Assembly (NCBI GenBank): GCA_946965045.2
Contig: OX337239.1
Span: 1,240,001 to 1,304,000 of the forward strand
Source of the DNA: Epithemia pelagica
Lineage: Eukaryota > Protista > Bacillariophyta
Length of the DNA: 64,000 nucleotides
Direction of reading: 5' to 3'
Each line of letters starts with the position of its first letter. Within the stretch, counting starts at the first letter, position 1. The position numbers and the translations under genes were made by a program. A model generated the notes under the pieces. It did not search any database. It was not told the origin of the DNA and saw only the letters and a list, made by a program, of their open reading frames with translations. Positions 4,904 to 53,974 of the stretch are shown one piece after another.

Positions 4904-8013
<3,110 letters not shown>

Positions 8014-16860: not shown

Positions 16861-16911
16861 CCGTTGGGGGTTGGGGTGCAAAGTGCAAAGTGCAAATCTG
16901 TTAGGAGTAAT

Positions 16912-18710: not shown

Positions 18711-18978
18711 TCTCATTGTGAAGGAGTTTTCTGTTCCACCCGACGAGTTGTTCGTAGAATGTCCGAATGAGGCGGCCGTTCCGTTGAGGGAGGTTCCCAT
18801 GGTCATTCGGAAAAGTTCCGGTTTGCAGTTCGTAAGATTCTGCTAGGGACGAATGTAAACTGTAGTGCAAGTTTTGTTATTTCTCAAATTATGACTAGGA
18901 GCTAAGTTGGGTGTAGTGCGAGGTCGATATTTTGTTGCATGTGTGGGAGTGAATGGAAGAGGCGCATGGACGCTGATA
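18711..18978 (-). repeat. 3' LTR
   Basis: Direct repeat of 25497-25764; preceded on the minus strand by purine-rich AAGGGCGAG (PPT, 18979-18987). Confidence 0.97.
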
Positions 18979-18996
18979 CTCGCCCTTGACCGAGGG

Positions 18997-21900
18997 CTAC
19001 CAACCCATGATCTTTTTGCGAGCCGTTTCGAAAGGTCCTGTGTCCAATGGTTTGGTAAAGGCATCGCCAAGTTGATCTGTCGTTGCGATCGCTTTCATGA
19101 AGATGCCGTTTGGATCAGTGCTGTTGGGTGAGTTGATGTGTGCGCGGAACCAGTGATATTTGATTCCAATGTGTTTGCTACGTGGTGTCATTCGCGGTGG
19201 ATCTTTCGTCGCCAGTTGTAAGGCGGCTTGATTGTCTTCCCAGACGGTGCAAACGAAACTTGGGCCCGCTGGATTCAGATGCAAATGAGTAATAATCTTG
19301 GCAAATTGATTGCGTAGTGGAAGGAGTGTACGCATACTGGTTGAGGCAGCAATATACTCGGCTTCCATGGTTGAGAGTGCAATCTCAGTTTGTAGTTTAC
19401 TGCTCCATGTGATAGGGGATTGACCGATGGTAATGATGAACCCGGTGCGCGACCGTACGGAAGTTGGATCATCGGGGTTCTCGTTACTCCACAGGCCAGC
19501 GAAATCGGCGTCCACATAACAATGCAGACTCAGATCCTTGGATGGTTTTAGGATTAGGCCCCTCTCTGCGGTTCCCATGAGGTAGCGACCGATTCGTTTT
19601 AGTGCCTCTCCATGTAGTGCTGTGGGGTTGTTGCTGAATCGTGCCGTTTGGTTGATGGCGAATGCGCAGTCGGGTCGCGTGTTATTCCCAAGGTAGAGGA
19701 GCATGCCCACCACGGATCGGTAATTGTAGTCGGCGTTGAGTGGTGTTCCGTCCAGGTCTTTTCCAATTGTTTTCGTGGCAGGTGTAGCCTTGGGATTGGA
19801 TTTTTCGAGTCCCAATGCGCTGATGATGCTACGAGTCAAGTGCGGTTGTCGTAGCTCGACGGTGCCATTCTCATGATGCTTGATTTCAACTCCGAGGTAC
19901 GTTGGGAGATCTCCGAGATGTTCGTAGTCCATCTTCGTCTGTGTCAGTCCCTCGAGGATTCGATTGACGCTTGCTTCGTCGTGTCCACAAATCACTGCGT
20001 CGTCAACGTACGTGATCATCACACAGCCCATTCCGATGAAGAGACATGGGTCGGAACCGTCAGGCTTGAGTCCAATTTGTTCCAGTTTGTTGCGTAGGTA
20101 ATCGTACCATAGTCGTGGTGCCCGACAATCGCCGTAAAGACTCTTGGTCACTTCTAGGACTTTGTCGCTCTGGCCTGCCCCATACCCTTGTGGCAGATTG
20201 ACATAGATCGGTTCGGGTAGATCCGATTGGACAAAGGCGTTCTTGAAATCGATTGAGACCGTGTGTAGATTGTGTTGGATGGACAAGTTGAGAAGAAGAC
20301 GGACGGTTGGCCAATCAATCACTGGTGCGAAGGTATCGTCTCGGCTAAAAGATGCCTTCTGCTGATCTCCACGGACGACCAACCTTGCTTTATACCGTGA
20401 GATGGTCCCATCTGGTTTCCGTTTCCGTACAAAGGTCCACATAACGTCTACGATCTCCTTTCCTTTCGCTTGGATACGAGGGACAAGTTTGAATGTTTTC
20501 TTGTTCTCGAGTTCGTTTAACTCCTTGTCCATAGCCGCAATCCACTTGTCCTGTTCTTCCTGAGACAACAAACGGATGTCGAAGTAGGATGGCGCGTCTT
20601 CGTTAATGGCTTTGGCACTGAAGTAGAGTGGATGCCAATCGTCGATGATGCCTAATGGCGACTGGATTTGAGCCAAGAGCCGCGAATCAAAAGTAGATGT
20701 GAGCTTGTCTGGGTCAAATCCGTTAGGAAAATCCCACTTGATGGAGTTGGCATAGTGTCCAAAAGCTGTTGGATCGTCGTTGATAGCCGTCATGGAGAAA
20801 CGTTGCTCTGTGACACTTGTGTGTGCCCAAGAGCTGTCTTGATGGGAATCCACATTGTCTGGAAATCGTACTGGAGCGCGACGTTGACGGTGAGGTCGGC
20901 CTGTAGTGGGTTCATGCGTCGCATCAGAGGCTGGACTTGGTGACGACTCGCCCGTTTTTAAACGGGGTGACGACTCGCCCGTTTTTGAACGAGGTGACGA
21001 CTCGCCCGATTTTGAGCTGGGTGACGACTCGCCCGGTTTGGATCGAGGTGTGGTAGGCATGTCGTCGGAAGTGGAATCGAAAGAGTCAGTCTCGTCAGTC
21101 TCGGCAAGAGGTGACAGAGGAGTGATATCGTCCAATTGGATGGGTGTCACGTTAGGATGAGATTCAAGAGTCGTCCGGCGATGGTTACGACCAAGATCTA
21201 ATGGTGTGCTTGGTGTAGTAGGCTGGTCGTGTGACGGTTGCTCTGCTCGCTCGCCCTCGGGGACATGCGGAACTGGAAGGGACGAAGTGTCGTCGAAGGA
21301 TACCTTGGGAAGGGACCAGACTGAATCCAAGTCGGGTAACGGTCCATCACGTGTCGGATCGTGGTCGTCGAGATAATGATCGCGGGTAAAGAAGTCGGGT
21401 AAACTGTTGTCTTGGGGGAATGACCACGTGCTGTTGACAGACATAAATAATTCGTCGTACACCACATGAAACTGGGGGGAAATGTGGCCAGTGTCCAAAT
21501 TCCGAATCATGCCCACCAGACTAGAATGTTGGGGAGAGAAACCCAAGAACTGACCACGACGAGACCGGCGTGCCCACTTGGGAAGTTTCTTACCGTCCTG
21601 CAGTTTTGGATCCAACACATAACTGGGACAACCCCACACACGAACTCGACGCAGCAGAGTACAATCGATCTTGGTGCCAGAGAACACTTCCATTGGACAC
21701 ATGTCGTTGTCTTCTTGAGGGACGTGATTGTAGATCCAGGTGGCGTATTCAAGGGCCATGGGCCATAAAGACGGTGAAAATGCTGACGGCCATCGAATGT
21801 GACAATGGATCATCATGGCTCGGGCCATGTATGTAACTGTTTGAATCGCCCGTTCAGCACCTGCATTGGCATGATGAGCTCCGACACCAGAGAGTGTGCT

Positions 21901-23751: not shown

Positions 23752-25148
23752 CGCAAGGAGGTAAGGGCAACATTGGCGTAAGTCTGGGTTGGTGCAGCAG
23801 TCGGTGTAGCAGTGGCACTGTCAGTCAAAGGGGTGTCGGCGGCTGGAGGAGAATCCGTAGTGTTCGCAATGGCAGCCGTGTCAGAGGGTGTGGCTGCAGG
23901 AGAGCGGCTGGAATTCACCTTGGTGGGGTCATGACGGTCTGTGCTGTGGTTACCCCAACGGCCGATGCCGTTTGGAGTACCATTCGGACACAAGGCACAC
24001 CACCACAATTTGCGCTTGGGATTCGTCGGATGAGGCTTGGAGTTGGCCTCACCAGGACCAGGAGGAGTAGTGTCGATCGGTAAAGGTGGACGACGACCAT
24101 TGTTCGACTTGGGGGTTCCAACCGGAGCAGCTTTCTTGGTCTCAGTGAGAGCAGGAAAAGCGGAGGTATCAGTCTTGACGGTCGGAAGCCATTTCTCGGA
24201 CAACAAAAGAGAATGGTATTTTGCCACGACACGTTCGCGTAATCCGAAAAAGTCTTGAAGGATGGGGTCGTCATGATTCTCCAAATAGTCCATCATGCTG
24301 AGAAACTTTGGAACCGTGCAAGTGAGAAGTCGTTCGACGAAGATACTGCAAATGTCGGCCGGGACATGTCCACTTAAGTTCAAACGTAGAACCACATTGT
24401 TAAACGTAGAGCAAAACTGATTTATGTTTTCACCAGGATAGGCAGTGACACTGTGTTTCTCCAATCGGCGGACGATACCACGAGCGGCGTCGGTAGTAGT
24501 CGTCATGAGTTGCGTGAGGATCATATGAAGAACCAAGGGCCCACCCTGCTCGTTGTCAGGGATCGTGACCAAGCGATTTTCAAGATCGGCACGAAGAGTC
24601 CCATCACAGGAGGCAAGCAACAAGTCCTGAGTCCAAGACAGATTCTGCGGGTGCAGACTATCGGTGGTGCGTTCGGCATAGATCTGGTTGCTCAAGCGGA
24701 CTTGAGCCTCGGAGAGCGAACAAGCATGGTCGAGTAAGCTCAAAGTAGCACCTGACGAGTCTAAAAGGCCGGTTTCTTCATCAACAGGAAGGATATCAAA
24801 CACCGAATGCATGCAGTACGTCGTAAGACGTGTCTTGAGTGTATAAAGTTGCATCATAATCTTGTTGTTGTCGTCGAAGAAGGATTTGTCATCGGTCGTA
24901 CTGACAACGGCCCAGGTGAAACTGAAGGGAGGAGTAAGTCCAACAACGGCTTCATTACGAAAGTCAAACAGCGTCTTCCCGGATAAGGAACTGCGATAGG
25001 CTGGAGAGACCGTGTCGGCGAAAGCTCCGAGTTCAAAAGTACGACTCTTGGCGGCAGTCAAAGTGATACCATTCATCTGAGTATCGGCTGAAAGGGAACC
25101 GACTCCAGAGGTCTTCTTGGGCGTTGAAACAGGAGTAGGGATCTTCAT
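23739..25148 (-). CDS. gag: Copia Gag
   Basis: From MKIPTP (ATG 25148) to TAG. Contains YPGENINQF and a CCHH-type knuckle WCALC...WGNHSTDRH. The frame stays open upstream to 25592. Confidence 0.88.
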   Translation of the reverse strand: MKIPTPVSTPKKTSGVGSLSADTQMNGITLTAAKSRTFELGAFADTVSPAYRSSLSGKTLFDFRNEAVVGLTPPFSFTWAVVSTTDDKSFFDDNNKIMMQLYTLKTRLTTYCMHSVFDILPVDEETGLLDSSGATLSLLDHACSLSEAQVRLSNQIYAERTTDSLHPQNLSWTQDLLLASCDGTLRADLENRLVTIPDNEQGGPLVLHMILTQLMTTTTDAARGIVRRLEKHSVTAYPGENINQFCSTFNNVVLRLNLSGHVPADICSIFVERLLTCTVPKFLSMMDYLENHDDPILQDFFGLRERVVAKYHSLLLSEKWLPTVKTDTSAFPALTETKKAAPVGTPKSNNGRRPPLPIDTTPPGPGEANSKPHPTNPKRKLWWCALCPNGTPNGIGRWGNHSTDRHDPTKVNSSRSPAATPSDTAAIANTTDSPPAADTPLTDSATATPTAAPTQTYANVALTSLRDFR

Positions 25149-25484
25149 GGTCTCAAAGATAGTAGGCAAAGGCAAGGAACTCAACAGCAAAGGTAAGCGG
25201 TAAGTTTGAGTCTGTTTTGGTTTGGACCAAAAAGTGAGTGTTAGTTCCCGTGCTCCAAGTTGTGTTGGGCCCAGTAACGGAGTGTTCTGGTTGGTGGACC
25301 AAGTCTCCAACTGCAATGTTGACTCCCAGTTGCCGAATGTCGGTCGCGTCAGGGTTCGGATTCGTGTAGGGGGCACAAATGAAATTTGTCGTACCACGAA
25401 TGAATCGTTAAGTAAAACAATTCTTGTCGGTAAGTAAATGGTCATCAGTAAGGTGAATACTGTTACAACCCAGTGGAACCGCTT

Positions 25485-25496
25485 GGGCTCATAACC
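25485..25496 (-). promoter_or_regulatory. Primer-binding site complementary to the anticodon arm of initiator tRNA-Met (half-tRNA priming)
   Basis: GGTTATGAGCCC immediately follows the 5' LTR and is complementary to GGGCUCAUAACC of tRNAiMet, the priming mode known for Drosophila copia and yeast Ty5. Confidence 0.85.
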
Positions 25497-25764
25497 TCTC
25501 ATTGTGAAGGAGTTTTCTGTTCCACCCGACGAGTTGTTCGTAGAATGTCCGAATGAGGCGGCCGTTCCGTTGAGGGAGGTTCCCATGGTCATTCGGAAAA
25601 GTTCCGGTTTGCAGTTCGTAAGATTCTGCTAGGGACGAATGTAAACTGTAGTGCAAGTTTTGTTATTTCTCAAATTATGACTAGGAGCTAAGTTGGGTGT
25701 AGTGCGAGGTCGATATTTTGTTGCATGTGTGGGAGTGAATGGAAGAGGCGCATGGACGCTGATA
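25497..25764 (-). repeat. 5' LTR
   Basis: Direct repeat of 18711-18978; sense-strand termini TATCA...TGAGA. Confidence 0.97.
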
Positions 25765-26892
25765 GTCCTGCATGGCAAAAGATACCTATCCAGCTGAAGC
25801 TATTGACAAAGAAACGGTTATTACTGTGAACCGTCAACTACGAAGACGACCGTCCTGGGTAACAGGCATTCCGCGTAACCGAGACAATCCCAACATGATC
25901 TGCAACGTATACAACCAAGTACTACAAAATGTCTTTTTCAAGGTGGAGAAAAACCCCGGATTTTTCTGTTTTCCAGTTATTGGAAAAGTCTTTGCCTGTG
26001 TGTCGCCAAGTCAGCTTGATTTGGAGCATTATGCGGGGTGGAAAATTGATGACGGGGGCGTAGAACTTGATGGGGAGAAGATAATGGAGAAATTAGTGAA
26101 GAAAAAGCCTTGGATGCAGCCATCGACATTGTTGAAGTCACCAGTACAAACTACTTTCATGATATTTGCTGGACGCTGGTGTTGCGGAACTTGAACGTGA
26201 ATTGTGACCCTGCGACCGATCCCATCGCACGTCTGAGCAGCCGTACCTGTACAGCCAATTTGCTTCCCGAATTTCGTGACTACGTGAACTCTACAAGAAA
26301 TAAAATGTCGCCAGAAAATTTGATTGCTCGTTACGGAGTACACTTGTTTCATACTTTGGTACACGAGGATGAGGATGGGGTCATTGGATGCGCCTATTTA
26401 GACGCGATTTGTCTTGGCGAGTATTCATCGTCTGTAAATAGACTTGCCGATCCCTCTTTCGATGCAAACCTTCGACTTTTGGCTCACGAAATTGGACACA
26501 ACTTGGGAGGTCATCATGTTGACAACCCAGCAAATCTCATGTACCCATTCATAATGCCAGAAGCAAATCAAAGCTTTCTGGACGAGACCAAAACAAACTT
26601 TACCAACCGACAGAATTTTCTGAAGGATTTGGTGGATCAAGGATATCGTCCGGAATAAAATTGTATCCAAGACGACTATACGTTCCCACCCACTGAGTCG
26701 CCGACCACAAGTTTGGCAACAGCCGAGACATCACCACCACCGACGAGCGCTCCTACAGAAACACCAACAGCTATGCCAACGTCTCACCCCACTATCTTAC
26801 CGACTTCGGAACCAACGAAGGTCCCAACAAAGGTACCCACGGGATCACCAACCTCGTATCCCACAGCTTCGCCCACATTTACCCCGACAGCT

Positions 26893-41602: not shown

Positions 41603-44600
41603 ATGTCTTCTTCCAAACTATCCTCAACCTCTTGGGTTTGTTCCCTTCCCAGTCTGTCCAACCAATGTTTGGAATCCTTGTTGATTCCCTCCGTGGCGTG
41701 GGTGACGGATCATGACTTGCAATATCAACAAGACGATGGTGGTTCGACGGTCTTGTCGTGTACGCATCATCACCAGTGGTCCAATGTGCAAAGGCCTTCC
41801 ACCGTCATGGCGCGAGGATGGGTGGGGGCCGTCCGTGTTTTGGCTAAACAAGCATCGGCCACCACGTCTGACTGCTTATCCTGGACAGCCATTCACGATG
41901 CCTGGATTGAGGCAGCCCATTCCACCTTGTGGCCCATTTGGAAACATTCGCTGCAACAACAAACATCCGCAACAGCAACCAGTGGTAGGTACCTGCATCA
42001 AGAATGTTCAACAAGACGAAAGAGGGAAAAGCAAAGAGGATAAGCGTATGGTTGAGGATTCTCACATTATGCCTTGCTGTTTTGTCAATGTTTCATTAGA
42101 AACGTCCGCCTTGCTGGAAGGTGCCACATGGGATTTTGTTCAACGTTTGGATCGTCAGTTGCACTTGAATACGTTTTTGGTACAAAATGTGGCATCGGTG
42201 GTGGATGTCGTATTGGTTCAAATGTTGGCCAGCATCTTGTTTGGTACAACGGCAAGTACATCCACTTTGACCAAACTTCCACTCCACGTTCATCGATGGA
42301 TGACAACCGTCTTGCACAAGCTGCAAGCCTGTTTCCCCTATCGTAGTATGGCGGGAGGATGGCGCTCAATTGGATTGCAACGAGACAATATTTGGCAAAT
42401 GTGGCTGGAACAATTGGAGACCAAGTGTACCATTGTCGAGAGCACTGCTGCCGCGGTGGAACCAACCACCACCACCACCACGACCGCACCTACAACCAAG
42501 CCGCAAGAAACGACCAGTGTCAAGAACAACCAGAAACAGAAAAAGACTGAGACGCCTGCAGTTGCAGCGACCCCTACTCCTGCAGCCAAGGCAGAGACGC
42601 CATCGTCCGTGTCGGATGACGATTCGAACAATCCCATTTTGCAAAAGCTGCAAGCAAGTGGCGTGCCGTTTGAATTGTACAATCACGCGGCCTGTCATAC
42701 GGCAGAAGAACTCGTCCAAAATGTCCCATTGTCGGACGCGTCGCATTCCCATACCAAAAACTTGTTCGTCCGCGACAAGAAACATGGCCATTTCTTGGTC
42801 ACCTTGGCCGCCACCAACACCACCTTTTCCACCAAATTCTTGGCCACAGCACTCAAGTTGAAAGGCAAGACCAATTTGCGATTGGCTGATGCGGCTATCT
42901 TGCAAGCCAAGTTGCAAGTTAAACCAGGATGTGTCGGGCCTCTCTGCATGGCCTTGGCCAAACAAGAGGAGGATCCCAAGGAGAACGTAACGCTGGTGCT
43001 GGACCAATCGCTTCTTTCCTGCACCAAGATTCATTCTCATGCCTTGCGTAACGATGCTAGCGTTCAACTAACACCAGACGATTTCCAATCCTTTTTGACC
43101 AAACACTGTAATGTAACGCCTGTGTTGGTAGATTTTGGAGCATCCGCAACAGGAGTAGAAAGCAGCGATGCGGCACCTGCCAAGTCCAAACCACAGGAAA
43201 AGAAGGTCGAGGCCCCCAAATCCAAGGCTCCCAGCAAGGCCGCCTCGACGGTTTCAACTGCATCGTCGAAAAAGAGCAACAAAAAGGGTGAAACTCTTTT
43301 GGCCTTGCAATGGAAAAAGCTGGAGAATTTTGCTTCCTGGTATTCCGATGTAATTGTCTTGTCGGAAATGATTTCCTATTACGATATCTCCGGGTGTTAT
43401 ATTTTGCGCCCATGGTCGTATAAAATGTGGGAATTGATTCAGTATTGGTTCAATGACCGGATTCAAGAATTGGGTGTTGAAAATGCCTACTTTCCCCTCT
43501 TTGTTTCACAAGACCGCCTGGAACGCGAAAAGGACCACGTCGAAGGCTTTGCCCCCGAAGTGGCTTGGGTTACCAAGTCGGGCAGTGGCGATTTGGCCCA
43601 GCCAATTGCCGTTCGTCCCACTTCCGAGACGATTATGTATCCAGCCTATTCGGATTGGATTCAGTCGCATCGTGACTTGCCTCTCAAATTAAACCAATGG
43701 AGTAATGTGGTACGATGGGAATTCAAATACCCTACCCCGTTTTTGCGTACACGTGAATTTTTGTGGCAAGAAGGACATACCGCCCATGCCACATATGAAG
43801 AAGCGGATGAGATGGTAATGCAAGCCTTGGATTTGTACCGACGTGTCTATGAAGAGTTGTTGGCAGTCCCCGTTGTTCCAGGGTATAAGACCGAGAAGGA
43901 AAAGTTTGCCGGAGGATACCGTACCACAACGGTGGAAGCTTATATTGCCGGGTCGGGACGGGCTATTCAAGGTGCTACGTCGCACAATCTGGGACAAAAC
44001 TTTGGCAAAATGTTTGATATTAACTTCCAAAATGACAAGGGCGAATCGCAAGTGCCGTGGCAGACGTCATGGGGATTAACGACCCGAACGATTGGTGTCA
44101 TGGTCATGGTGCATGGTGACGATACAGGCTTGGTCTTGCCTCCTCGCGTCGCGCCTCTTCAAGTGGTGATTGTACCCATTGTTAGCAAAAAGTTTACCCG
44201 CGAACAAGCCGCTCCCTATTGCGAAGGTATTTTGCAAGATTTGCAACAACAAAAAATTCGAGTCAAGTACGATGATCGATCCCTGTACAATCCTGGATGG
44301 AAGTATAATCACTGGGAGCAAAAGGGTGTCCCAATTCGTATTGAAGTGGGACCACGGGATGTCGACAACAAGTCAGCGCGCATTGTGATTCGGCACAATC
44401 AAGACAAGCAAGACATGCCTGTGGACGGATTGGGCAAAGCACTTGTGGCGTTGTTGGAGACGATTCAACAAGACATGTTTACAAAGGCCAAAGAAGCTCG
44501 TGATTCCCACTTCGTTCAAGTGACGGATTGGAAAGACTTTGTTCCCAATTTGGAAAAGCATAATTTGGTTTTGACGCCCTGGTGTGGTGGCAAGTACGAA

Positions 44601-45214: not shown

Positions 45215-46281
45215 TTATAGAATGTAAGCATTCAAGGCAGCTCCTACGGAAAAGGCCTCGGGAGTGGCATCAATACAGGCTTGTCGTTCTTCGTCCGTCC
45301 ACTTGGCGGCCATGGTTTCAATCGACTCCTTGACGGCATTCTTGATTTCCTTCAGATTGCCCTCCCACTGTTGTCCAAACGGCAAACAAGAGAGAAACCA
45401 TCAGCAAACGAAAATGTACAACGAAAATTCATGAGACCCTGGGGCCAATGACATGCTGTATAACTCAAGCGTCATAGTTGAAACGCAGGAATCGACCAAC
45501 CGAAACATACCTTGTAAAATTCCATAGGTGGATCGGGAACATCTTCAAACAACTGTTTTTTCATGGCTTGTCCAATCATCCGTCCCCCTGCCGTATGGGC
45601 AAAGTAAAAATTGTAATAATGGCACACAAGCGCGGGAATGTTATTTCTCAACTGTTGCAATACCTCAGCATATTGGCGTCCGGCCGCACCGACCGAGACG
45701 GTCAATGTTGTACTGGGCATGAGGGACATTTGCGTCTTTTTTGGACTGGACGAGGGAAAATACACATCCATCATCCAATCCACATCATGTCGCAAGGCTG
45801 TCGTTCGTTCCAATCCAGTTTGGCGAAAGGCTTCCAACTCTGGCAATTGCTCCACCAACTCTTCAAAGGTGGCGTAGACATACTGAGAATCGATCAAGTA
45901 TTGCAAATAGTCCGCATGGGTGGGAGGGGCTTTCTTTGTGGCCTCTTTCGACGGAGCTTGACCTTCTTGTGGCGCTTGTTCCCTGGTATGCAACCGCATG
46001 GCAGCCCCCCGCAATTCCGAATCAATAAACGAATATGATGTGCTTGCTGTCGCAGCAGTCGAGTCGGCCGTCTCAGTGGCAGTCGACGACAATGCCACCG
46101 TCGAAAACTGTGGCAGTGGTAAAATGGAGCGTTGAACGAGTCGTCCTTGTTGTTGTTGTTGTGGAGGCACCATGAGCACAAAGGCCATTGTCAATCTTGT
46201 GGAGCTGCATGTCACCACAACCAAGAGGAGGAGGAGACCAAACCGGTTCCATGATGATACGGGTGATTGGGAAGATATCAT
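45215..46281 (-). CDS. Plastid-targeted heme oxygenase
   Basis: complement(join(45215..45367,45511..46281)). AMRLHT (heme-ligand His), YLIDSQYVY, GLERTTAL, HYYNFYFAHTAGGRMIG; signal peptide plus AF motif. Confidence 0.92.
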
Positions 46282-46985
46282 CCTGTGTTCAATTCAATCG
46301 AGAGGGCAAACCAAAGGTTAACAAGGAGAAAAATAGGGGTGCTTGTGCTTCCGGTAGGACTTGTAGCTATGAGGGGTGGAGAAACAAGAGTGCTTCCAAC
46401 TCTAGTTTGCCACACTGGGAAGATGAGGCTGCAATTGATGTTTCTTGGGTAATGGTCAACACTTTCTTTCCGTGTTGTATGGTGTTGCCTAATCTTCGTT
46501 CTATTCGTCGAATTCTGGGTACTGTGGAGGAACAGTGAAATTGAAATATGAAATACACCATGAACATGAACGGCCCGAGGCAGGGTTGTGAATTACAAAT
46601 TACCCATTTTAGCACAATTCCAAGAATTATAATAAAATTACCCTAACATCACCAATTCATCTTATCTTCCACAATCCCCATCGCATTTGAATAAATTACC
46701 TAATTATCTTTCATATGTTTCCCACCATAGAGCAAATTACTATATTCAATTCTAGTCTCCTAGCTCCATGTAATTGAGACCCTTATTCCATTCCCCCCCT
46801 CTCACGATCCATATAATTAGTCCCCAATTACACATCATACCCCCCATTGAATTATCAAATCACTCCCTATCCACATGTATTACTGGAATTTGGTCGAATA
46901 ATAATGAACTTCTATAGAGTTTTCTTTGCTCATTCGTTACAACAACAGATGAGGAATGGTGAATGAAAGAACACACCATGTACCA

Positions 46986-47074
46986 TGCACCTCCACCACC
47001 ACCACTCATTTGCGTTTGTGCAGATCTTGCACCTCCACCACCACCACTCATTTGCGTTTGGTTTGTGCAGATCT
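46986..47074. repeat. 42-bp tandem duplication upstream of the transposase
   Basis: tgcacctccaccaccaccactcatttgcgtttg...gcagatct at 46986 and 47028. Confidence 0.9.
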
Positions 47075-47183
47075 GCAGATCCGTTTCTCTCCCTCTCTTC
47101 AACAACACTCAGACTCTCTTCCCCCTCCATCGTCATACTTCTTTCCATTTGTTGCAAGTTATTATTGATACACCTATTGCAAC

Positions 47184-50100
47184 ATGGCTCCCCCTTCCTC
47201 ACCAAAGAAGAAACCCAAACCACCACCGAAGAAGAAACAGTCCTCCAGCACCAAGAAGAAAAGCGCTCCCAACAAAAAGAAGCCTTCTGCTTTAGAGGCT
47301 CAACAAGCTTTGATCGAGAAGGATTTTGGTGAGGATGTACAGGCAACCAAAGACGTGAACCAAATGGAGAAAGATGTTCTCCCTGTGTACACAAGCATTC
47401 CTACTCTCTTTTTTGGTACCAAATCCTCTTCACAATATTGGGATTGGTCAATTCATATCAACTGGATTGAATTCGAGAAACTCGTCTCAAACAATAGAGA
47501 AGAGCTCGAGTCTTCTTTATACCCCGGATACCACAAAATAATCAAACTCTTCGATTCCTTAGTTGCCATCGATGAAGAGAAGACCAAGACTTTGTCGCCT
47601 CCTGATCTGAGAGACAAGTTTTGGAAAATGTCCCGACGTGTTCTCATCTGTCCTAGATGTTTCAAGAACAAGTCACAATCACTATCTGATTCGGTTATGG
47701 TTTGCTCGCACGACAAGGCCTCTAACATCTACCAACACATTAAAGGCCATCACAAAGATCTCTATGACACTATACAGGCTGGCGGAAGTATATTGGGGCG
47801 GAATCCGAAACCCCCACCGTCTAACCAAAAGAAGCTATCAGGATTCAAAGCGCCAGTCCAACCACGCAAACAAGCCACCAAGGAACTCCAACGCCTCATG
47901 TATGAGTTCATCAATGACTGTTGTCTTCCAGCAGTAACAGTCGAGAAGCCCCAGTTCCGTGCTTTGTTGAAATATGCCTTTGACAACGGTTCCCAGTTAA
48001 AAGACTCTCGAGCTGAAGCCATGAGCCGACGGGAAATCACTCAGATACGGGTATCGTCGTACCAGGAGTTCATTGATGTTGTTTCCGATCTTGCACGAAA
48101 AGTCCGAGCTGAATACCGTCGCCTTTGTCAACATGAAATCCCATTCGCCACAGTGTGCCACGACATTTGGCAAGCACGGAAACACGACGTGCTGGGAGTA
48201 ACTATCATGTTATGTGACCCACGCAACTGCGTCATCTATCGCATACCAATCGGTCTGGCAGAAACACAAGGACATGCTGCTGTTGACGTTGCTGCCCTAA
48301 CGCATTCTCTTCTTAAAGCCGTGGGATTTCGTCCATCTGACCTTTGTGCTACAGTGAACGATAATACTTCCGCAGCAGTGCTAGCGGGAAAGTACATTGT
48401 TGGAGAGCATGCGAGTAAGGGCAAATGTGACATGCACCGTGCAGAATTGGTGCTCAAGCATGCTACTGGTTTGATTCAGCGTTATCAAAACAAGACTTTG
48501 ATCGATTCCTTTCCAGCATTTGTCGACGCCTGGCAGGTTGCTAAGGAGTTTGCTTCGTACCTCTGTTCCAGAAAAGCATATCACCGATTCGAAAAATTCA
48601 AGTCTGTTGTCTCATCTCTTGGATGGGTTGTTGTGTCCATCCCACTCCCCAACGATACTCGAGTGGGCGGCTGTGTGTTATCCATGGAGACGCTTCTCCG
48701 CATACTGTATCCAATGAAGGAGTATGCCTCTAAAGCCGTTGAGTCGGATCCTCACTTTATTACCCTCTTCAACAAGATCGACTGGACATTGATCTCGCAG
48801 TTTGAAGGAATTCTCCATCCGCTTCGTGGAGTCTCGCTATCATTGCAAACTGATGAACCAGGTTCTGGATCGGCTTCCCTGTTGGAAATCTATACATGTC
48901 GATTCCTTATCAAACACATGCGAACAGGTGTTGTTGGTTGTCTTCCTACCAATCTAAACTATGGTCAACAGTGGGACGCCAGCATCACCATGAAGGAGCT
49001 CGATGAAAAAAAACGGAAAAAGGTCAAGTTTGAGAAACTCGAGAAAGGACCTCGAGACCTAATCCGTCGCATACTCAAGGAATACGATTCATACTTAACC
49101 AACAAGGACGAAGACGGTCTCAAGGCCATGTGTGCCAACCCCCTACTTGTGAATGTGTATGAAGAACATCTCGTCGAATTAGGAGCCTACAATGAAGATG
49201 AAGTAAAAGAAATAAGGCGGCTTTTTATCGAAGACATGGTGAAACAATTCACAAACAAGAAAGTCTCACAAATTGGTGCTTTGATTGCCAAACAAGGAAA
49301 CATGGCAGTGTCGAACAAGAACACCGCTACCGATACTACAAGTACGGCTCGTACGGTTCATGCAACTGCTTCCAACGCGACCACGGGCGGGAAAGCCACT
49401 GCAAACAACGATTCCGATTCCGATTCTGATACCTATGTCCCACTCAACCCATTTGAGAAAATTCGAAGATCGAGGGAGTTGAAAAAACAGGCACGACTAC
49501 AATTGAGTGGGACGGCTGTAATGGGCGGTCAAGAAGCAGAAATCGTTGCGGCATTGCGGAAAGTATGCACAGAAGCATTCGACGAATACCGTTCCATGTG
49601 TTCGAAGAAGGTGGAACATCAGTGGGATACTGTTATACAGAATTATCCCACGAAGCAGTTGGATAAAGATTCAGAGAAGTGGACAGACGATGAGACAAAC
49701 GAGTTTCTCGAATACTGTTCGGAACACAACTTCCTGAAGGTTGGCAAATACTTTGACGTGATGAAATGGTGGGATGATAACAAAGGTGATTATCCCTATG
49801 TGTTTGTTAGCGCAATCATCTGGCTCACTAAGCCCGCTACAAACGCCTTCCAGGAACGCATCTTCTCTTTGGGAACGTGGTTTTCACAAAATAAGCTGAT
49901 GTCTAATCTTTTGAAAAAACATTTCGAAATGAGGACCATGGACTGCCTAACAAGGGAGCTGAGACGAGAAATCCAGCAACGGGAATCCGAATTGGAAGCT
50001 GTGAAGAGGAACAAGACAAAAGGCTCCACTCTGTCCAAGTATGTTGATAAGCGTCGTCTAGAAAGTGAGAAAGGTGATGGTACTGCTGACAAAGAGATTG

Positions 50101-51221
50101 AAGTTGTGGAAAAAGCAGATGAGACCTTGAATGAAGAAAGTGCCTCTCAACAAAAGACGGCCGTTAGGACAAAGTCCATTCAAACTGCCACTGAAGGTTT
50201 TAAGAAATATGTTCGAGCGGCAAAGTTCCCTGAGTCTGGTCCAATCTCCAAGGTTTCCGAAGATCCAACGTTAGAGATGACGTATTATCCACTGTCGGAT
50301 GACGACGAGCCAGATGGGAAACAAAGAGCCACTGCTAGTGGAAAGAAAGGACAGAGATCACCTACAACAGAGGAAGCGGATGGCAAACCACCGGCAATCA
50401 ACAAGAAAGCAAACAATGAAGCACCTGCAAAACCTAAGCAGTGGAACAGAGTCGTTTACACACGAGTCAGTGGTAAGCCGACATTAGATGACGCGGACTC
50501 AGTCATCTATTCCTTAGGAACTGCTGAAAGTATGGATGAAGACAGTGACTGCGCTATGAATCAAGTTGTCCGTGACATAGTCAAAAATCCCGAAAAGGTT
50601 GTTGTACTTGAGTCACTTGCAGGAAGTTCTGACGAGATTCCCTTAGAAGTTGAGGTAGTGAATGAGTCAAAGGGGGGAGAAAAGAGAAAGACAGTCAGTT
50701 CGGATTCCAAACAATCTCGGAAGAAGCAAAAGACGAAACAAACTACCATGACTGTAGCGGTACGGACATCGCCACCGAGGCGTGCAAAAGAAAAGTCACG
50801 CAATACACCTCCATCGGCAAAGCTAGTGCGTTCGGATGCAGCCAAAGGAAGTGGAAGTAAGAACAAAGCAAAGAAAACACGTGGAAAGTCAAAAGAAATC
50901 ACCCAGTCCAAAGAAGACGCCCATAGTTTGGTCGAGGAAGACACACCCGGTGATCCACATAACGATCATGGAACGGATAAAGACAACAACGATTCCGAAG
51001 ACGACGAAGAGAGAAATCAAGATGGGCATGAAGGGGTGGATGTAGAAGAGATCAATGGCGACGAAGGTGATGAATATGATAGTAACAACGAGAATGATGT
51101 AGGAGAATCTATGGAGGAGCAGGAAGAAGACTTTGCCGTTGATGAGGGTGATGAGTGTGACGAGAGTGATGAGCAGGGTGATGAGGAGGGTGATGTGGAG
51201 GGTGACGATGAGAACGAGTAA
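47184..51221 (+). CDS. hAT-family transposase, 1345 aa
   Basis: Lys-rich NLS-like start; BED-like finger CPRC...HIKGHH; catalytic D (CHDIW), D (VNDNT), CDMH (CxxH), NDTRV, and E in the dimerisation region PATNAFQERIFS; long acidic tail. Confidence 0.93.
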   Translation: MAPPSSPKKKPKPPPKKKQSSSTKKKSAPNKKKPSALEAQQALIEKDFGEDVQATKDVNQMEKDVLPVYTSIPTLFFGTKSSSQYWDWSIHINWIEFEKLVSNNREELESSLYPGYHKIIKLFDSLVAIDEEKTKTLSPPDLRDKFWKMSRRVLICPRCFKNKSQSLSDSVMVCSHDKASNIYQHIKGHHKDLYDTIQAGGSILGRNPKPPPSNQKKLSGFKAPVQPRKQATKELQRLMYEFINDCCLPAVTVEKPQFRALLKYAFDNGSQLKDSRAEAMSRREITQIRVSSYQEFIDVVSDLARKVRAEYRRLCQHEIPFATVCHDIWQARKHDVLGVTIMLCDPRNCVIYRIPIGLAETQGHAAVDVAALTHSLLKAVGFRPSDLCATVNDNTSAAVLAGKYIVGEHASKGKCDMHRAELVLKHATGLIQRYQNKTLIDSFPAFVDAWQVAKEFASYLCSRKAYHRFEKFKSVVSSLGWVVVSIPLPNDTRVGGCVLSMETLLRILYPMKEYASKAVESDPHFITLFNKIDWTLISQFEGILHPLRGVSLSLQTDEPGSGSASLLEIYTCRFLIKHMRTGVVGCLPTNLNYGQQWDASITMKELDEKKRKKVKFEKLEKGPRDLIRRILKEYDSYLTNKDEDGLKAMCANPLLVNVYEEHLVELGAYNEDEVKEIRRLFIEDMVKQFTNKKVSQIGALIAKQGNMAVSNKNTATDTTSTARTVHATASNATTGGKATANNDSDSDSDTYVPLNPFEKIRRSRELKKQARLQLSGTAVMGGQEAEIVAALRKVCTEAFDEYRSMCSKKVEHQWDTVIQNYPTKQLDKDSEKWTDDETNEFLEYCSEHNFLKVGKYFDVMKWWDDNKGDYPYVFVSAIIWLTKPATNAFQERIFSLGTWFSQNKLMSNLLKKHFEMRTMDCLTRELRREIQQRESELEAVKRNKTKGSTLSKYVDKRRLESEKGDGTADKEIEVVEKADETLNEESASQQKTAVRTKSIQTATEGFKKYVRAAKFPESGPISKVSEDPTLEMTYYPLSDDDEPDGKQRATASGKKGQRSPTTEEADGKPPAINKKANNEAPAKPKQWNRVVYTRVSGKPTLDDADSVIYSLGTAESMDEDSDCAMNQVVRDIVKNPEKVVVLESLAGSSDEIPLEVEVVNESKGGEKRKTVSSDSKQSRKKQKTKQTTMTVAVRTSPPRRAKEKSRNTPPSAKLVRSDAAKGSGSKNKAKKTRGKSKEITQSKEDAHSLVEEDTPGDPHNDHGTDKDNNDSEDDEERNQDGHEGVDVEEINGDEGDEYDSNNENDVGESMEEQEEDFAVDEGDECDESDEQGDEEGDVEGDDENE

Positions 51222-51275
51222 AATTGTAGGAGACCTACGAAGAAGACATTACATGATACATGATTAGTTTACTAT

Positions 51276-53099
51276 CTATAACTGTTTATAACTACCGTAT
51301 TTTCGAACGAGTTGTTGGACTCTGTCTTTTAATTCGTCACTCATTTCGGATTCGGCAATGATGGATTGCAGCTTGTGTCTATTCTCCGACACTGCACTTT
51401 GACTCAATGATCCAAACATTGGGTTAATAGACGACCAGTCAGTGGGATGAACCCATGATTCAAGATACTTGGATGTTAAATATCCACCTGTATCCTTCGG
51501 TACCCAACCCAAAAATTGGGTCCATCTGATCACGTGAATATCAGAAGGAATACCATCCGATCGACCAAATGATGACTCGACAATAATCGCGGCGGTTTTG
51601 TATCCGATACCAGTGAGGGTAGACAGTTCTTCGATCGTGATGTTGGAAGGAATTCGCCCACCATAATGCTTCATAAAGTAGTTTGCTGCATTAATTATGC
51701 GTTCTGTGTTCTGGTAATACCGACCCGGTTCCGAGAACATGGAGCAGATTGCATCAGGTCCGAATTGATCGCTGGCATCGATCACAGCTCTTGAAGACGT
51801 GATCCCAAAAGAAAATATACGTGGCATGACTCGGCTAAGTTGAGAATCCGAAGTGCTCGATGACATACAGATAGTCATGAGGAACATGAAGGCCCTGTCT
51901 GCCTGTCGGTCATCTTTTCGAATTGATGCGTCAATCCATTCTTCCCAATTGTCTCTTGGGGAGATTATTCCCATGGACTTGGCCTTTTCGTGGACAGACA
52001 ACAGAGCAATAAGGTCGAACTTCCAAATCAAAGTCTGAATGGGACAGAAAATAGGAAGGTATGGAGGTTTGTCAAATACTTTTTTTAGCATTGGTGGGTC
52101 GTGAGGCATAATGCGGCGCTTTTCCTTTGTGCAATATTGGATTGTTTTTTTGGATCGCGACAACGATTTGAGAAACTTGGACATTTCTTGATTTCGGGCA
52201 CGAGTTGGATATAAGTGATAAGCCTGTCGATGGACGGGGTGTGCTTTTCTGGGTGAATGTGAAGGAGATTTCCGCTTCAACAGTGTCTGATTTGGAGAAT
52301 CTGATGGAGTATCGGTGGGAGTGTTAGATTCAGACGTTGGATCAGTGGTAGTACAAGTTTCTGGAGACTCGGGGACTGCTTTTTGGGATAGTTTTGTAAG
52401 CAGGTTGGAATATTCATCCCTGATACATCGCAGGTATGGTGAAATGTTTCTTGGTATATACACAGAACATGATGATTTGGATAAAGAAGAACATGGTTCT
52501 AGGAAACAGTCGGTGGTCATCTTCTGTGGTGATTGCTTGCAATATATAGTTGTGTCCGTGGATAATATCCACGAAAGAGCCATTGACTGAATGGAAGACT
52601 GTAGTGGTTGTTCGTTTGCTTGCTCTTGTTCGATGGAGGAAAAGCATTCAAGGGACTGTTGATTGTGTACGAGTTTGAAATGTGGTTTGCAATGAACATG
52701 AAGGATGATTGTTGTACTACCAGGGGGTTGATCAACAAAATGGAAGTGTTGATGTTGCCAGGGACCGGAAATTTCTGTAGTATTGTAGTCTTCCAATATG
52801 GTTTGGAGAACGATTGCTGAAATCAATTCAACTTGCGCAGAAAATGAAAGCAGATCTACTCGGCAGTCATGAGAGGCAGATCCAGTGGTATTGTGGGTTT
52901 GGTAGGAGATATGACCGTCCACTGAGAGTAGCCAATTGATTGTTGCTTGTTCAATGGATTTCAGCATCTCAATTCTGGATGAGGTATTTGTTGTTGTACC
53001 AACGTTGGACCAGATGGCAAATAACTCCAAGTTGCAATGCATGATGTACATTGGTCTGCAGAAAGATTGGAATTGAAGTGATGGAAGTTCCTTGTTCAT
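51276..53099 (-). CDS. Endonuclease III/NTH1-like HhH-GPD DNA glycosylase/AP lyase with unknown N-terminal extension (transposon cargo)
   Basis: CMSSSTSD (cf. LSSQTKD), HYGGRIP, HhH LSTLTGIGYKTA (catalytic Lys), GIPSDIHV (catalytic Asp), LESWVHPTDWSSIN (cf. LEEWLP..W..IN). No C-terminal 4Fe-4S Cys motif. Confidence 0.9.
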   Translation of the reverse strand: MNKELPSLQFQSFCRPMYIMHCNLELFAIWSNVGTTTNTSSRIEMLKSIEQATINWLLSVDGHISYQTHNTTGSASHDCRVDLLSFSAQVELISAIVLQTILEDYNTTEISGPWQHQHFHFVDQPPGSTTIILHVHCKPHFKLVHNQQSLECFSSIEQEQANEQPLQSSIQSMALSWILSTDTTIYCKQSPQKMTTDCFLEPCSSLSKSSCSVYIPRNISPYLRCIRDEYSNLLTKLSQKAVPESPETCTTTDPTSESNTPTDTPSDSPNQTLLKRKSPSHSPRKAHPVHRQAYHLYPTRARNQEMSKFLKSLSRSKKTIQYCTKEKRRIMPHDPPMLKKVFDKPPYLPIFCPIQTLIWKFDLIALLSVHEKAKSMGIISPRDNWEEWIDASIRKDDRQADRAFMFLMTICMSSSTSDSQLSRVMPRIFSFGITSSRAVIDASDQFGPDAICSMFSEPGRYYQNTERIINAANYFMKHYGGRIPSNITIEELSTLTGIGYKTAAIIVESSFGRSDGIPSDIHVIRWTQFLGWVPKDTGGYLTSKYLESWVHPTDWSSINPMFGSLSQSAVSENRHKLQSIIAESEMSDELKDRVQQLVRKYGSYKQL

Positions 53100-53974
53100 T
53101 ATTGGTTATTGTGAAGAAGTCAACAGGACAAGCTGTAGAGGTACAACGACGAATGAACACAGAACACATGACCTCTGGGAGCACGAATTCTGAGCACTGA
53201 GTACTGAGCACTACGCACTAATCAACACTGTGAACTGCATGGGAGCGTAAAAAATTATGATAATTTGGTAATTAATTGGGTAATAGAATGGAAATTTATT
53301 CAATTACTCATTGGTGTGGTAATTTAATAATTCTTAAAAATGAATTCTAGGTGGTGCGTTGAATATTGTTATTGAAACGGACCAATTCCAAGGCAAAGTG
53401 TGTGAGAAGGAAATTATGGTAATTTTTATAAATTAATTCAAACGGACAAGGAATTGGGAAAATTACAATAATTCAATTCGAAGACAATTGAGTGGATTTG
53501 TTAATTCAATAATTATATTCTAAATTATATTAGGGTTAAATTAATTTTGATATTAAATTAAAGAGAGAATACAAGGAGTAATAAATTATAAAATTCCATT
53601 ATTAAGTGATTGTGCGGTAATTCACAACCCTGGCCCGAGGTGTTGACGTTTGTTCTTTGGAAAGATATACGTCAGAAGTTTTTTCGTGTATACGACGCAC
53701 CACGGGGCGACCCCGTGCCAAGCACGCGCGACCACATGATGGATTTCATGCGACTGAGGAAACATCAATCTACAGGTAGACATCGTAGCATTGCTCCCTA
53801 CTGGAGCCTGGAGTACTCCTACTCCTAGGAGTACCTCATACCCCATCATCGGATGAGAGACGTTCTTGTAGGTCGATGTACAACAAAACAAAACAAAACT
53901 ATTGTAGTTTAATCCTGGTCGAACGTGGGACAAAAAGGCACGACATGCCGCAGAGACATGCTACAGTCTGCAGT

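What the first reader, a model, noticed from the sequence alone, without database searches (positions are those of the whole stretch)
46573..53640. Intact hAT transposon carrying a catalytically complete NTH1/endonuclease III-like DNA glycosylase as a second gene
Seen: perfect 16-bp TIRs and a perfect 8-bp TSD bracket exactly two uninterrupted, intronless, convergent ORFs - a full hAT transposase and a 607-aa protein whose C-terminal ~170 aa match the HhH-GPD/Nth fold with catalytic Lys (GIGYKTA) and Asp (PSDIHV). Known: hAT elements typically encode only a transposase; Nth-family enzymes are bifunctional glycosylase/AP lyases; the plant 5mC demethylases DME/ROS1 belong to the same superfamily; diatoms methylate TEs. 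Inference: a transposon-borne base-excision enzyme could act as an anti-silencing factor (removing methylated or modified cytosines from the element), process damaged or hairpin ends during transposition, or nick target DNA. I know of no described hAT family with this cargo.
Basis: partly seen in the sequence, partly recalled or inferred. Interest (0 to 1): 0.92.

Follow-up and report, generated by a model that had tools for sequence, protein, structure and literature searches.

The report
hAT transposon with own DNA glycosylase
This is an intact copy of an old, diversified family of cut-and-paste (hAT) transposons, probably in a diatom, that always carries beside its transposase a second gene for an endonuclease III-type DNA base-excision enzyme; I found no published description of a transposon with this cargo, and what it does is still untested.

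Summary
An 8-bp TSD (GCCCGAGG) and perfect 16-bp TIRs bracket a 7,052-bp element with two convergent intact ORFs: a 1,345-aa hAT transposase and a 607-aa protein. The C-terminus of the second protein is an NTH1/endonuclease III-like HhH-GPD domain with the catalytic Lys and Asp.

It is not a recent passive capture. At least 11 subfamilies below 50% identity occur in the same assembly. The same layout also occurs in a sediment metagenome and in an unrelated SRA run, and seven fetched copies have different perfect TSDs. Transposase and glycosylase trees have the same topology for 8 elements. The glycosylase domains form one clade (support 100) apart from 95 cellular Nth homologues. Lys is kept in 31/31 and Asp in 32/33 representatives, and dN/dS is about 0.2.

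The whole family has lost the 4Fe-4S cluster. Its N-terminal 245 residues are a confidently folded, internally duplicated module with no known relative. A spliced RNA assembly holds the glycosylase ORF at low depth, from a sibling copy, and no transposase.

Function is inferred, not shown; anti-silencing is the leading guess. The scan has already noted this family about 45 times elsewhere in this genome, with four concordant follow-ups.

The parts
46573..46580 (.). Left target-site duplication GCCCGAGG
   Evidence: Identical 8-mer at 53633-53640
46581..46596 (+). Left terminal inverted repeat CAGGGTTGTGAATTAC
   Evidence: Perfect 16-nt inverted match to 53617-53632. DNA-run contigs break exactly at 46581. 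The CAGGGTTGTG core is shared by sister subfamilies.
46597..47183 (+). Transposase-side subterminal region and promoter/5' UTR, with GAATTAC-type short repeats and a 42-bp tandem duplication at 46986-47060
   Evidence: AATTAC/TGAATTA motifs occur 10 times in the two 300-bp ends against about 0.3 expected from the interior. In sister subfamilies the motif changes in step with the inner half of the TIR. Duplication: (D4); it is absent from copy L011.
47184..51221 (+). hAT transposase, 1345 aa: BED-like zinc finger (CPRCF...HIKGHH, aa 156-190), D327 (HDIWQ), D393 (NDNTS), CDMHRAEL block, E891 (QERIFS), hAT dimerisation region aa 843-897, and a long charged low-complexity tail from about aa 930
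   Evidence: Pfam PF05699 E 2.4e-7. Hermes match over the ERxFS block. All listed motifs are invariant in 7 transposases of 33-74% identity. Coordinates.
51222..51275 (.). 54-bp spacer between the two convergent stop codons
   Evidence: Spacers of 42-153 bp in sister elements.
51279..51962 (-). Clusterless NTH1/endonuclease III-like HhH-GPD glycosylase domain plus C-terminal helices (aa about 380-607). Catalytic K501 codon at 51597-51599 and D520 codon at 51540-51542.
   Evidence: phmmer against NTHL1 E 1.3e-11; family profile E 1.1e-19. AF2 model pLDDT 85.6, with best Foldseek hits NTHL1 and EndoIII-DNA complexes. K 31/31 and D 32/33 in the family. No C-x6-C-x2-C-x5-C motif in 0 of 67 family proteins.
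51963..52364 (-). Linker: a disordered Ser/Thr/Pro-rich stretch (aa 246-299) and a conserved basic segment (TR...SRSK..I.Y...RH.PG..PK, then PRDxWExW)
   Evidence: pLDDT below 50 for aa 246-295. Conserved columns T299, R300, S314, Y322, R329, P381-W388.
52365..53099 (-). Orphan N-terminal region (aa 1-245): two tandem copies of a beta-hairpin/two-helix/strand module, each with a W-[LM]-I-R helix (W56, W177)
   Evidence: AF2 pLDDT 89.9, pTM 0.82. Internal repeat aa 3-71 against 126-192, hhalign probability 96.6%, E 6e-10. No match in PDB, AFDB, Atlas or Pfam.
53100..53616 (-). Glycosylase-side subterminal region and promoter/5' UTR, with the same short repeats
53617..53632 (-). Right terminal inverted repeat
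53633..53640 (.). Right target-site duplication GCCCGAGG

Best explanation
The element is an autonomous, recently mobile two-gene hAT transposon. This part is shown. Its second gene encodes a working bifunctional DNA glycosylase/AP lyase that descends from a eukaryote-type NTH1 (endonuclease III). It has lost the Fe-S cluster and gained a family-specific, duplicated N-terminal module. The gene was acquired once by the ancestor of this hAT lineage and has been inherited with the transposase ever since under purifying selection, so it serves the element. That much is strongly inferred. The most likely mechanism is weakly inferred, at about 0.35 on its own. The enzyme would be brought to element DNA or chromatin by its N-terminal module or by the transposase. 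There it would flip out and excise a modified or damaged pyrimidine (5-methylcytosine or a derivative, or its deamination or oxidation product) and nick the site with its Lys-Asp lyase chemistry. Host base-excision repair would then restore unmodified cytosine. The effect would be to keep the element's promoters and ends transcribable and transposable, which is a counter-silencing or self-maintenance function.
For: Transposon anatomy: perfect TIRs and TSD. Transposase motifs invariant across subfamilies. Mobility: sister copies sit at different loci with different perfect TSDs. These are L002 and L003 (same subfamily, TTGTTCAC and ATTCAGGC), L004, L007, L009 and L010. A 98.3%-identical sibling, L011, also exists. 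Stable linkage: every fetched relative of the 607-aa protein lies convergent to a hAT transposase. This holds in the same assembly, in sediment metagenomes and in an independent SRA run. Co-inheritance: the glycosylase and transposase ML trees of 8 elements have identical topology with high support. Single origin: 24 transposon glycosylase domains form one clade (SH-aLRT 100, stem 0.72) against 95 cellular Nth-like proteins. Selection: dN/dS is 0.195 overall for L001 against L003 and 0.14-0.37 for each domain where it could be computed. The HhH-GPD domain has the lowest dN. K501 is kept in 31/31 and D520 in 32/33 representatives that are at most 50% identical. Fold: the AF2 model matches NTHL1 and DNA-bound EndoIII, and the family profile hits NTHL1 at E 1e-19. 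Expression: run X4 is RNA, since it shows GT..AG joints that the DNA run lacks. It holds 51425-52756 inside the ORF at depth 3-5. Precedent for transposon-borne enzymes aimed at cytosine methylation: TET/JBP genes in fungal DNA transposons, including hAT7 (PMC12730594).
Against: No biochemical or methylation data exist, so substrate and benefit are guesses. By sequence the domain groups with NTH1/EndoIII, which act on oxidised pyrimidines. DME/ROS1 are not detected even at E 1. A review states that 5mC excision is known only from the plant DML family (PMC9861306). The subterminal repeats that look like transposase-binding sites are A/T-rich and contain no CpG, so restoring methylation-blocked transposase binding is unlikely. 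CpG observed/expected in the elements (0.76-0.84) is somewhat lower than in their flanks (0.86-1.0), so the elements are not visibly protected from CpG decay. The RNA contig carries the variants of a sibling copy (51699T, 51705G), not of this copy. Its depth is about 1% of that of neighbouring host genes, and transposase RNA was not seen. Between the two young copies the glycosylase shows 7 synonymous and 11 non-synonymous differences, which gives no signal of constraint at that time scale.
Confidence: 0.55

Rival explanations
1. The enzyme is a cofactor for transposition or for repair afterwards. Its AP-lyase/nicking chemistry, or its ability to recruit the base-excision repair machinery, would help process the donor-site break, the 8-bp gaps at the new insertion, or damaged element ends. 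Alternatively the protein is an obligatory partner of the transposase, like the Myb-like second protein of Harbinger elements.
For: The pairing with the transposase is strict and ancient, and the trees are identical. The orphan N-terminal module and the basic linker could bind the transposase or element DNA. Weak structural echoes of helix-turn-helix DNA-binding domains appear, but only at Z 3.5-4.7, which is noise level. Two of nine loci show transposition-linked rearrangements.
Against: Known hAT elements (Ac, hobo, Hermes) transpose with the transposase alone (established knowledge). hAT chemistry leaves no abasic site for a lyase to act on. Strict conservation of the base-flipping catalytic pair points to base excision rather than a scaffolding role.
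Confidence: 0.22
2. The enzyme is a self-repair device against mutational decay. It would remove deaminated 5mC (T:G), uracil or oxidised pyrimidines from element copies, slowing the C-to-T erosion that methylated transposons suffer.
For: Its NTH1 ancestry fits oxidised-pyrimidine repair. Differences between copies are mostly transitions: 42 C>T/G>A and 26 T>C/A>G out of 113.
Against: The known T:G mismatch glycosylases of this superfamily (MIG, MBD4) lack the catalytic Lys, whereas this family keeps it (established knowledge). A diffusible repair enzyme benefits the whole genome, so selection for it on a transposon would be weak unless it is targeted. The elements have lower CpG observed/expected than their flanks.
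Confidence: 0.15
3. The domain is catalytically inert and serves only as a DNA-binding or lesion-binding adaptor.
For: Loss of the Fe-S cluster. The void-filling Gln of the NTHL1 LSSQTKD motif is replaced by Ser (MSSSTSD).
Against: The Lys and Asp are invariant across about 35 representatives at 50% identity or less. So are the HhH glycines and the GIP-D-HV loop. Clusterless active relatives exist in the superfamily, for example OGG1, and MutYX 8uuc listed.
Confidence: 0.05
4. It is a recent passive capture of a host NTH1 fragment, or a host gene that merely happens to lie next to a transposase.
For: hAT and other DNA transposons do sometimes pick up host fragments (established knowledge).
Against: The TIRs and TSD enclose both genes at 8 or more independent loci. 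The subfamilies are only 30-60% identical yet show co-phylogeny. The transposon glycosylases are monophyletic on a long stem. dN/dS is about 0.2.
Confidence: 0.02

Closest known systems
Eukaryotic NTH1/NTHL1 and bacterial endonuclease III (Nth), bifunctional HhH-GPD glycosylase/AP lyases
   Same: They share the HhH-GPD fold and the catalytic Lys in the hairpin and Asp in the GPD loop. NTHL1 is the best sequence match (profile E 1e-19) and the best structural match.
   Different: The 4Fe-4S cluster is absent and is replaced by two helices. The hairpin reads G-[IV]-G-[YH]-K-T instead of G-V-G-P-K-M, and MSSSTSD replaces LSSQTKD. About 380 extra N-terminal residues carry an orphan duplicated module. 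The gene sits inside a transposon. It falls below Pfam's HhH-GPD gathering score (14.2 against 26.2 bits).
Plant DME/ROS1 (DML) 5-methylcytosine glycosylases
   Same: They belong to the same superfamily, are bifunctional Lys/Asp enzymes, are large multi-domain proteins, and act against silencing.
   Different: No sequence match at E 1 or below. The Fe-S cluster is absent, and neither the DML-specific split catalytic domain nor the conserved C-terminal domain is present. DML enzymes are host genes reported only from plants and green algae (PMC9861306).
TET/JBP-carrying DNA transposons of fungi (KDZ, hAT7, IS3EU, EnSpm and others; PMC12730594)
   Same: These are DNA transposons, hAT among them, that carry a DNA-base-modifying enzyme as a second gene, which is speculated to remove silencing marks.
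   Different: The enzyme class differs (dioxygenase against glycosylase/lyase). According to that paper the fungal TET genes were passed often and passively between transposon superfamilies. Here there is one acquisition followed by strict co-divergence with one hAT lineage.
Ac, hobo, Hermes: classical hAT elements
   Same: They share the 8-bp TSD, short TIRs beginning CAG, subterminal short repeats, and a BED/DDE/hAT-dimerisation transposase.
   Different: Classical elements have one gene. Here there is a second, convergent gene, and the transposase is long (1150-1365 aa) with a charged tail.
VANDAL (Mutator-like) elements with the VANC anti-silencing protein, Arabidopsis (Hosaka et al. 2017, reference 8 of PMC12730594; details from my own knowledge)
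   Same: A DNA transposon encodes an accessory protein that counteracts DNA-methylation-based silencing of its own family.
   Different: VANC is a sequence-specific DNA-binding protein without known enzymatic activity, and the transposon superfamily is different.

Membership tests
hAT superfamily of DNA transposons | 8-bp target-site duplication | tested here: met
   GCCCGAGG on both sides here. Six further copies also have perfect 8-bp TSDs, each with a different sequence.
hAT superfamily of DNA transposons | Short TIRs (about 10-25 bp) beginning with C/T-A-G | tested here: met
   CAGGGTTGTGAATTAC, 16/16. The CAGGGTTGTG core is shared across subfamilies.
hAT superfamily of DNA transposons | Transposase with a C-terminal hAT dimerisation domain that carries the catalytic Glu | tested here: met
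   PF05699 scores 30.9 bits against a cut-off of 21.4. Hermes aligns over ...ERxFS. E891 is invariant.
hAT superfamily of DNA transposons | DDE catalytic triad in an RNase H-like core, and a BED-type zinc finger | tested here: inconclusive
   Candidate D327 (HDIWQ), D393 (NDNTS) and a CxxC...H...H finger are invariant in 7 diverged transposases. Their equivalence to Hermes D180/D248 rests on motif resemblance, not on a structural alignment.
Endonuclease III / NTH1 (Nth) family | HhH-GPD fold | tested here: met
   The AF2 model matches 7rdt, 1orn, 1p59 and 2abk (E 1e-6 to 1e-3; TM by target 0.6-0.7).
Endonuclease III / NTH1 (Nth) family | Catalytic Lys in the helix-hairpin-helix and Asp about 19 residues downstream | tested here: met
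   K501 and D520 align to the NTHL1 and EndoIII residues. They are conserved in 31/31 and 32/33 family representatives.
Endonuclease III / NTH1 (Nth) family | C-terminal C-x6-C-x2-C-x5-C motif ligating a 4Fe-4S cluster | tested here: not met
   0 of 67 family proteins carry the motif, against 45 of 108 nearest cellular homologues. The alignment to NTHL1 shows the Cys loop replaced. The protein is therefore derived from Nth but is not a canonical member.
Endonuclease III / NTH1 (Nth) family | Glycosylase/beta-lyase activity on oxidised pyrimidines | not testable with these tools
   This needs enzyme assays.
DME/ROS1 (DML) 5mC glycosylases | Sequence membership of the DML clade, with its split glycosylase domain and conserved C-terminal domain | tested here: not met
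   The family profile finds NTHL1, EndoIII and OGG1 in the PDB but no ROS1/DME chain at E 1 or below. No such chain is among the top 50 Foldseek hits either.
DME/ROS1 (DML) 5mC glycosylases | 4Fe-4S cluster | tested here: not met
DME/ROS1 (DML) 5mC glycosylases | Excision of 5-methylcytosine | not testable with these tools
   This needs enzyme assays and methylation maps.

The most novel reading that the evidence does not exclude
The transposon-encoded, clusterless NTH1 derivative is a true DNA demethylase. On this reading it excises 5-methylcytosine, or a diatom-specific modified cytosine or thymine, from its own element. That would be an independent, transposon-driven invention of glycosylase-based active demethylation outside plants, targeted by a new type of duplicated DNA- or chromatin-reading module.
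Probability: 0.22. Interest if true: 0.92.

Novelty: new variant of a known kind. Interest (0 to 1): 0.77.

Why it matters
Transposons that carry enzymes acting on DNA bases are rare. The known cases are TET/JBP dioxygenases in fungal elements. A hAT lineage that has kept a catalytically intact base-excision enzyme through deep diversification would be a second, mechanistically different case. It suggests that transposons can use base-excision repair for their own ends, whether against silencing, against mutational decay or during transposition.

It also offers three practical things. The first is a naturally clusterless NTH1 derivative, useful for asking what the Fe-S cluster does. The second is a new, confidently folded orphan domain. 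The third is a candidate tool, a compact bifunctional glycosylase with a possible targeting module. Because diatoms methylate transposons but have no described active demethylase, the family makes the question of active demethylation in this group directly testable.

Tried and rejected
- **Pfam on ORF2.** It gave only sub-threshold HHH and HhH-GPD hits. That is why the gene is unannotated, and it is not evidence against the fold.
- **Fold of the N-terminal module.** I searched Foldseek PDB, AFDB clusters, VIA-align wide, the ESM Atlas by shape and by features, and Pfam on 22 members. Nothing rose above noise. A faint DUF6824 hit (probability 0.77, TM 0.41) and helix-turn-helix-like hits at Z 3.5-4.7 are not reliable.
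- **JGI metagenome scan with the family alignment.** Alignment A2 was too diverse to give a search pattern. A1 matched 114 stretches but none was confirmed.
- **dN/dS between most subfamilies.** dS is saturated, so only the L001/L003 and L004/L010 segments were usable.
- **The idea that the glycosylase frees methylated transposase-binding sites, as for Ac.** The subterminal repeats contain no CpG.
- **CpG depletion as a read-out of protection.** The elements are slightly more depleted than their flanks, so there is no support.
- **Linkage test on contig L013.** The contig ends 484 nt after the transposase stop, so it is uninformative.
- **Organism identity.** It was not established here.
- **Empty-site or excision polymorphism at this locus.** It could not be tested, because the element plus its flanks exceeds the 6-kb limit for laying reads.
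Full report
**1. Observation**

The coordinates are exact.
- GCCCGAGG occurs at 46573-46580 and again at 53633-53640.
- Immediately inside these lie CAGGGTTGTGAATTAC (46581-46596) and its perfect reverse complement (53617-53632).
- With up to 3 mismatches these are the only two matches to the 16-mer in the 64-kb window.
- In a DNA run, assembly contigs break exactly at 46581, as expected for the edge of a repeated element.
- The 7,052-bp interior holds two long uninterrupted ORFs in convergent orientation, 54 bp apart: 47184-51221 (+), 1345 aa, and 51276-53099 (-), 607 aa.

**2. The transposase**

- ORF1 passes Pfam's cut-off for the hAT dimerisation domain.
- It aligns with Hermes transposase over the block that carries the catalytic Glu.
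- I aligned it with six sister transposases of 33-74% identity. The following are invariant: a BED-like CxxC...H...H finger, HDIWQ (D327), NDNT (D393), CDMH-AEL and QERIFS (E891).
- Both 300-bp ends are enriched in short repeats resembling the inner half of the TIR. In this element they are AATTAC/TGAATTA, 10 copies against about 0.3 expected.
- In each sister subfamily the repeat changes in step with its own TIR, which is the classical pattern of hAT transposase-binding sites.

**3. The second protein**

- Residues 402-567 align with human NTHL1 (E 1.3e-11) and with bacterial endonuclease III. K501 (GIGYKTA) and D520 (GIPSDIHV) fall on the catalytic Lys and Asp.
- A family profile raises the NTHL1 match to E 1e-19 and EndoIII to 1e-13. 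OGG1 is marginal. MutY and DME/ROS1 are not found at E 1 or below.
- An AlphaFold2 model built on 35 family sequences has mean pLDDT 85.6. Its best structural neighbours are NTHL1 and the DNA-bound EndoIII complexes, followed by NTH1 proteins of plants, animals and fungi.

- **Loss of the Fe-S cluster.** The four-cysteine motif that ligates the 4Fe-4S cluster is missing in all 67 family proteins examined, while 45 of the 108 nearest cellular homologues show it. In the alignment the NTHL1 Cys loop is replaced by non-Cys helices.
- **An orphan N-terminal module.** Residues 1-245 fold with high confidence (pLDDT 89.9, pTM 0.82) into two tandem copies of one module. The repeat is residues 3-71 against 126-192 (hhalign probability 96.6%, E 6e-10). 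This module has no detectable relative in PDB, AFDB clusters, the ESM Atlas or Pfam.

A disordered linker and a conserved basic segment join the two parts.

**4. It is a family, not a one-off capture**

- A word-indexed search found four relatives at 30-42% identity over the whole length.
- An exhaustive profile search found about 42 representatives (clustered at 50% identity) at E below 1e-30. A gap follows, down to ordinary Nth proteins at about 1e-22.
- Every relative whose context I fetched lies convergent to a hAT transposase. There are seven further subfamilies or copies in the same assembly, two contigs of a sediment metagenome and one contig of an unrelated SRA run.
- L002 and L003 are two copies of one subfamily at different loci, with different perfect TSDs. 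L004, L007, L009 and L010 also have perfect 8-bp TSDs and TIRs sharing the CAGGGTTGTG core.
- Cluster listings show 3-10 near-identical members per subfamily and at least 11 subfamilies in this assembly. None carries an NCBI or UniRef name; two JGI entries are called 'endonuclease III'.
- The transposase search mirrors this: 28 clusters, nearly all from the same assembly.

**5. Co-inheritance and selection**

- ML trees of the glycosylase and of the transposase from the same eight elements have the same topology with high support. There are 10,395 unrooted topologies for eight taxa.
- 24 transposon glycosylase domains form a single clade (SH-aLRT 100, stem 0.72) against the 95 closest cellular homologues. 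One acquisition followed by co-divergence is the simplest history.
- dS is saturated for most pairs. For L001 against L003, dN/dS is 0.195. By segment it is 0.37 for the N-terminal repeats and 0.21 for the linker. The HhH-GPD domain has the lowest dN. L004 against L010 gives 0.14-0.18.
- Across representatives at 50% identity or less, K501 is kept in 31/31 and D520 in 32/33. The HhH glycines, the GIP-D-HV loop and many core residues are kept too.
- The window copy and its 98.3%-identical sibling L011 differ by 36 synonymous and 36 non-synonymous changes in the transposase, and by 7 and 11 in the glycosylase. That is about what recent neutral drift of inserted copies would give.

**6. Expression**

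- Run X4 is RNA. It shows a 115-nt GT..AG joint and a 143-nt CT..AC joint in the flanking host genes that the DNA run X1 lacks, and it has no coverage of intergenic DNA or of the element's left end.
- On the element, X4 holds four contigs covering 51425-52756, all inside ORF2, at depth 3-5. Neighbouring host genes reach about 400. Nothing lies on the transposase.
- The contig carries 51699T and 51705G, which are the alleles of sibling L011. Transcription is therefore shown for the subfamily, not for this copy.

**7. What it most likely does**

Shown: this is an intact, recently mobile two-gene hAT element.

Strongly inferred: the second gene is a working bifunctional glycosylase/lyase kept because it benefits the element.

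The substrate and the benefit are not known.
- I rank counter-silencing or self-maintenance by excision of a modified or damaged pyrimidine first, at about 0.35 for the specific mechanism. The reasons are the Lys/Asp chemistry shared with the plant 5mC glycosylases, the fungal TET-carrying transposons as precedent (PMC12730594), and the extra module that could give targeting.
- Against it, the domain is of NTH1 type and not DML type. 5mC glycosylases are reported only from plants (PMC9861306). The putative transposase-binding repeats lack CpG. The elements are not protected from CpG depletion.
- A transposition or repair cofactor role (0.22) and a role against mutational decay (0.15) remain open.
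- An inert adaptor (0.05) and a passive capture (0.02) are unlikely.

**8. Comparison with known systems and novelty**

- The element meets the hAT criteria I could test.
- The enzyme is derived from Nth but fails one defining feature, the Fe-S cluster. It is not a DME/ROS1 member.
- Full-text searches for hAT or transposon-encoded glycosylases found nothing comparable.
- I class it as a new variant of a known kind: a hAT transposon with a new class of enzymatic cargo.
- The scan has already noted this family about 45 times elsewhere in this genome. Four follow-up agents reached the same general reading, and my tests agree.
- This report adds the following, though I could not see the full earlier reports to check what they contain: family-wide cluster loss, the duplicated orphan module, the identical-topology and monophyly tests, the RNA evidence with its caveat, and the argument from CpG-free binding repeats.

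**9. Side observation**

At two of nine loci (L011 and L004) the element sits exactly at the junction of a roughly 5-kb tandem direct duplication of host DNA. Reversed-ends transposition of maize Ac produces this structure (PMC3744419).

Noticed in passing
L011:4485-21443 (sibling copy of this element): The 98.3%-identical sibling is flanked on both sides by the same 4,979-bp host segment in direct orientation (4485-9463 = 16465-21443, 99.94% identical). The first 5 nt of the transposase-side TIR are missing. This A-element-A layout resembles the tandem direct duplications made by reversed-ends transposition of maize Ac (PMC3744419).
   Followed up: partly
L004:4028-21776: This is a second case of the same layout. 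The host segment 4028-8986 and onward (HisKA and DLH genes) recurs straight after the element, from 16845 (96.5-97.2% identical). The element also has doubled termini. An outer pair CAGGGTTGTGTA lies at 9535 and 16844 with TSD ATCCCAAA, and an inner pair lies at 9547 and 16214. This looks like insertion into a short related element. Its transposase is split into 916-aa and 329-aa ORFs.
   Followed up: partly
window 41984-42098 and 45368-45510: RNA run X4 shows spliced joints here (GT..AG on the + strand, CT..AC meaning a minus-strand intron) in the two host genes left of the element. The ORF 45472-46281 is therefore not the full coding sequence of that gene.
   Followed up: no
window 46986-47060: A perfect 33-nt repeat spaced 42 bp apart (His/Pro-rich if translated) lies just upstream of the transposase start codon. 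The sibling copy L011 lacks one unit, so this is a recent length polymorphism between copies.
   Followed up: partly
window 51222-51275 and sister elements: The two convergent genes end only 42-153 bp apart in every subfamily. Their 3' UTRs probably overlap and could give double-stranded RNA, a possible trigger for small-RNA silencing that the element would have to tolerate or use.
   Followed up: no
L001:9559-16300: This copy of subfamily P0002 is decayed. There is an in-frame stop near the 5' end of the transposase, and no recognisable transposase-side TIR or matching TSD. The glycosylase ORF is still intact (636 aa).
   Followed up: partly
L005, L006 (sediment metagenome PRJEB13118) and L009: The metagenomic elements group with subfamily L009 of this genome in both gene trees. 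The flanks of L005 do not form a TSD (ATGGGAAC against CAGTCAAA), perhaps because a multi-copy element was assembled chimerically.
   Followed up: no
window 18706-25769: Another first-stage note reports a Copia element here, and its CpG observed/expected is 0.99. I used it only as a composition comparator.
   Followed up: no
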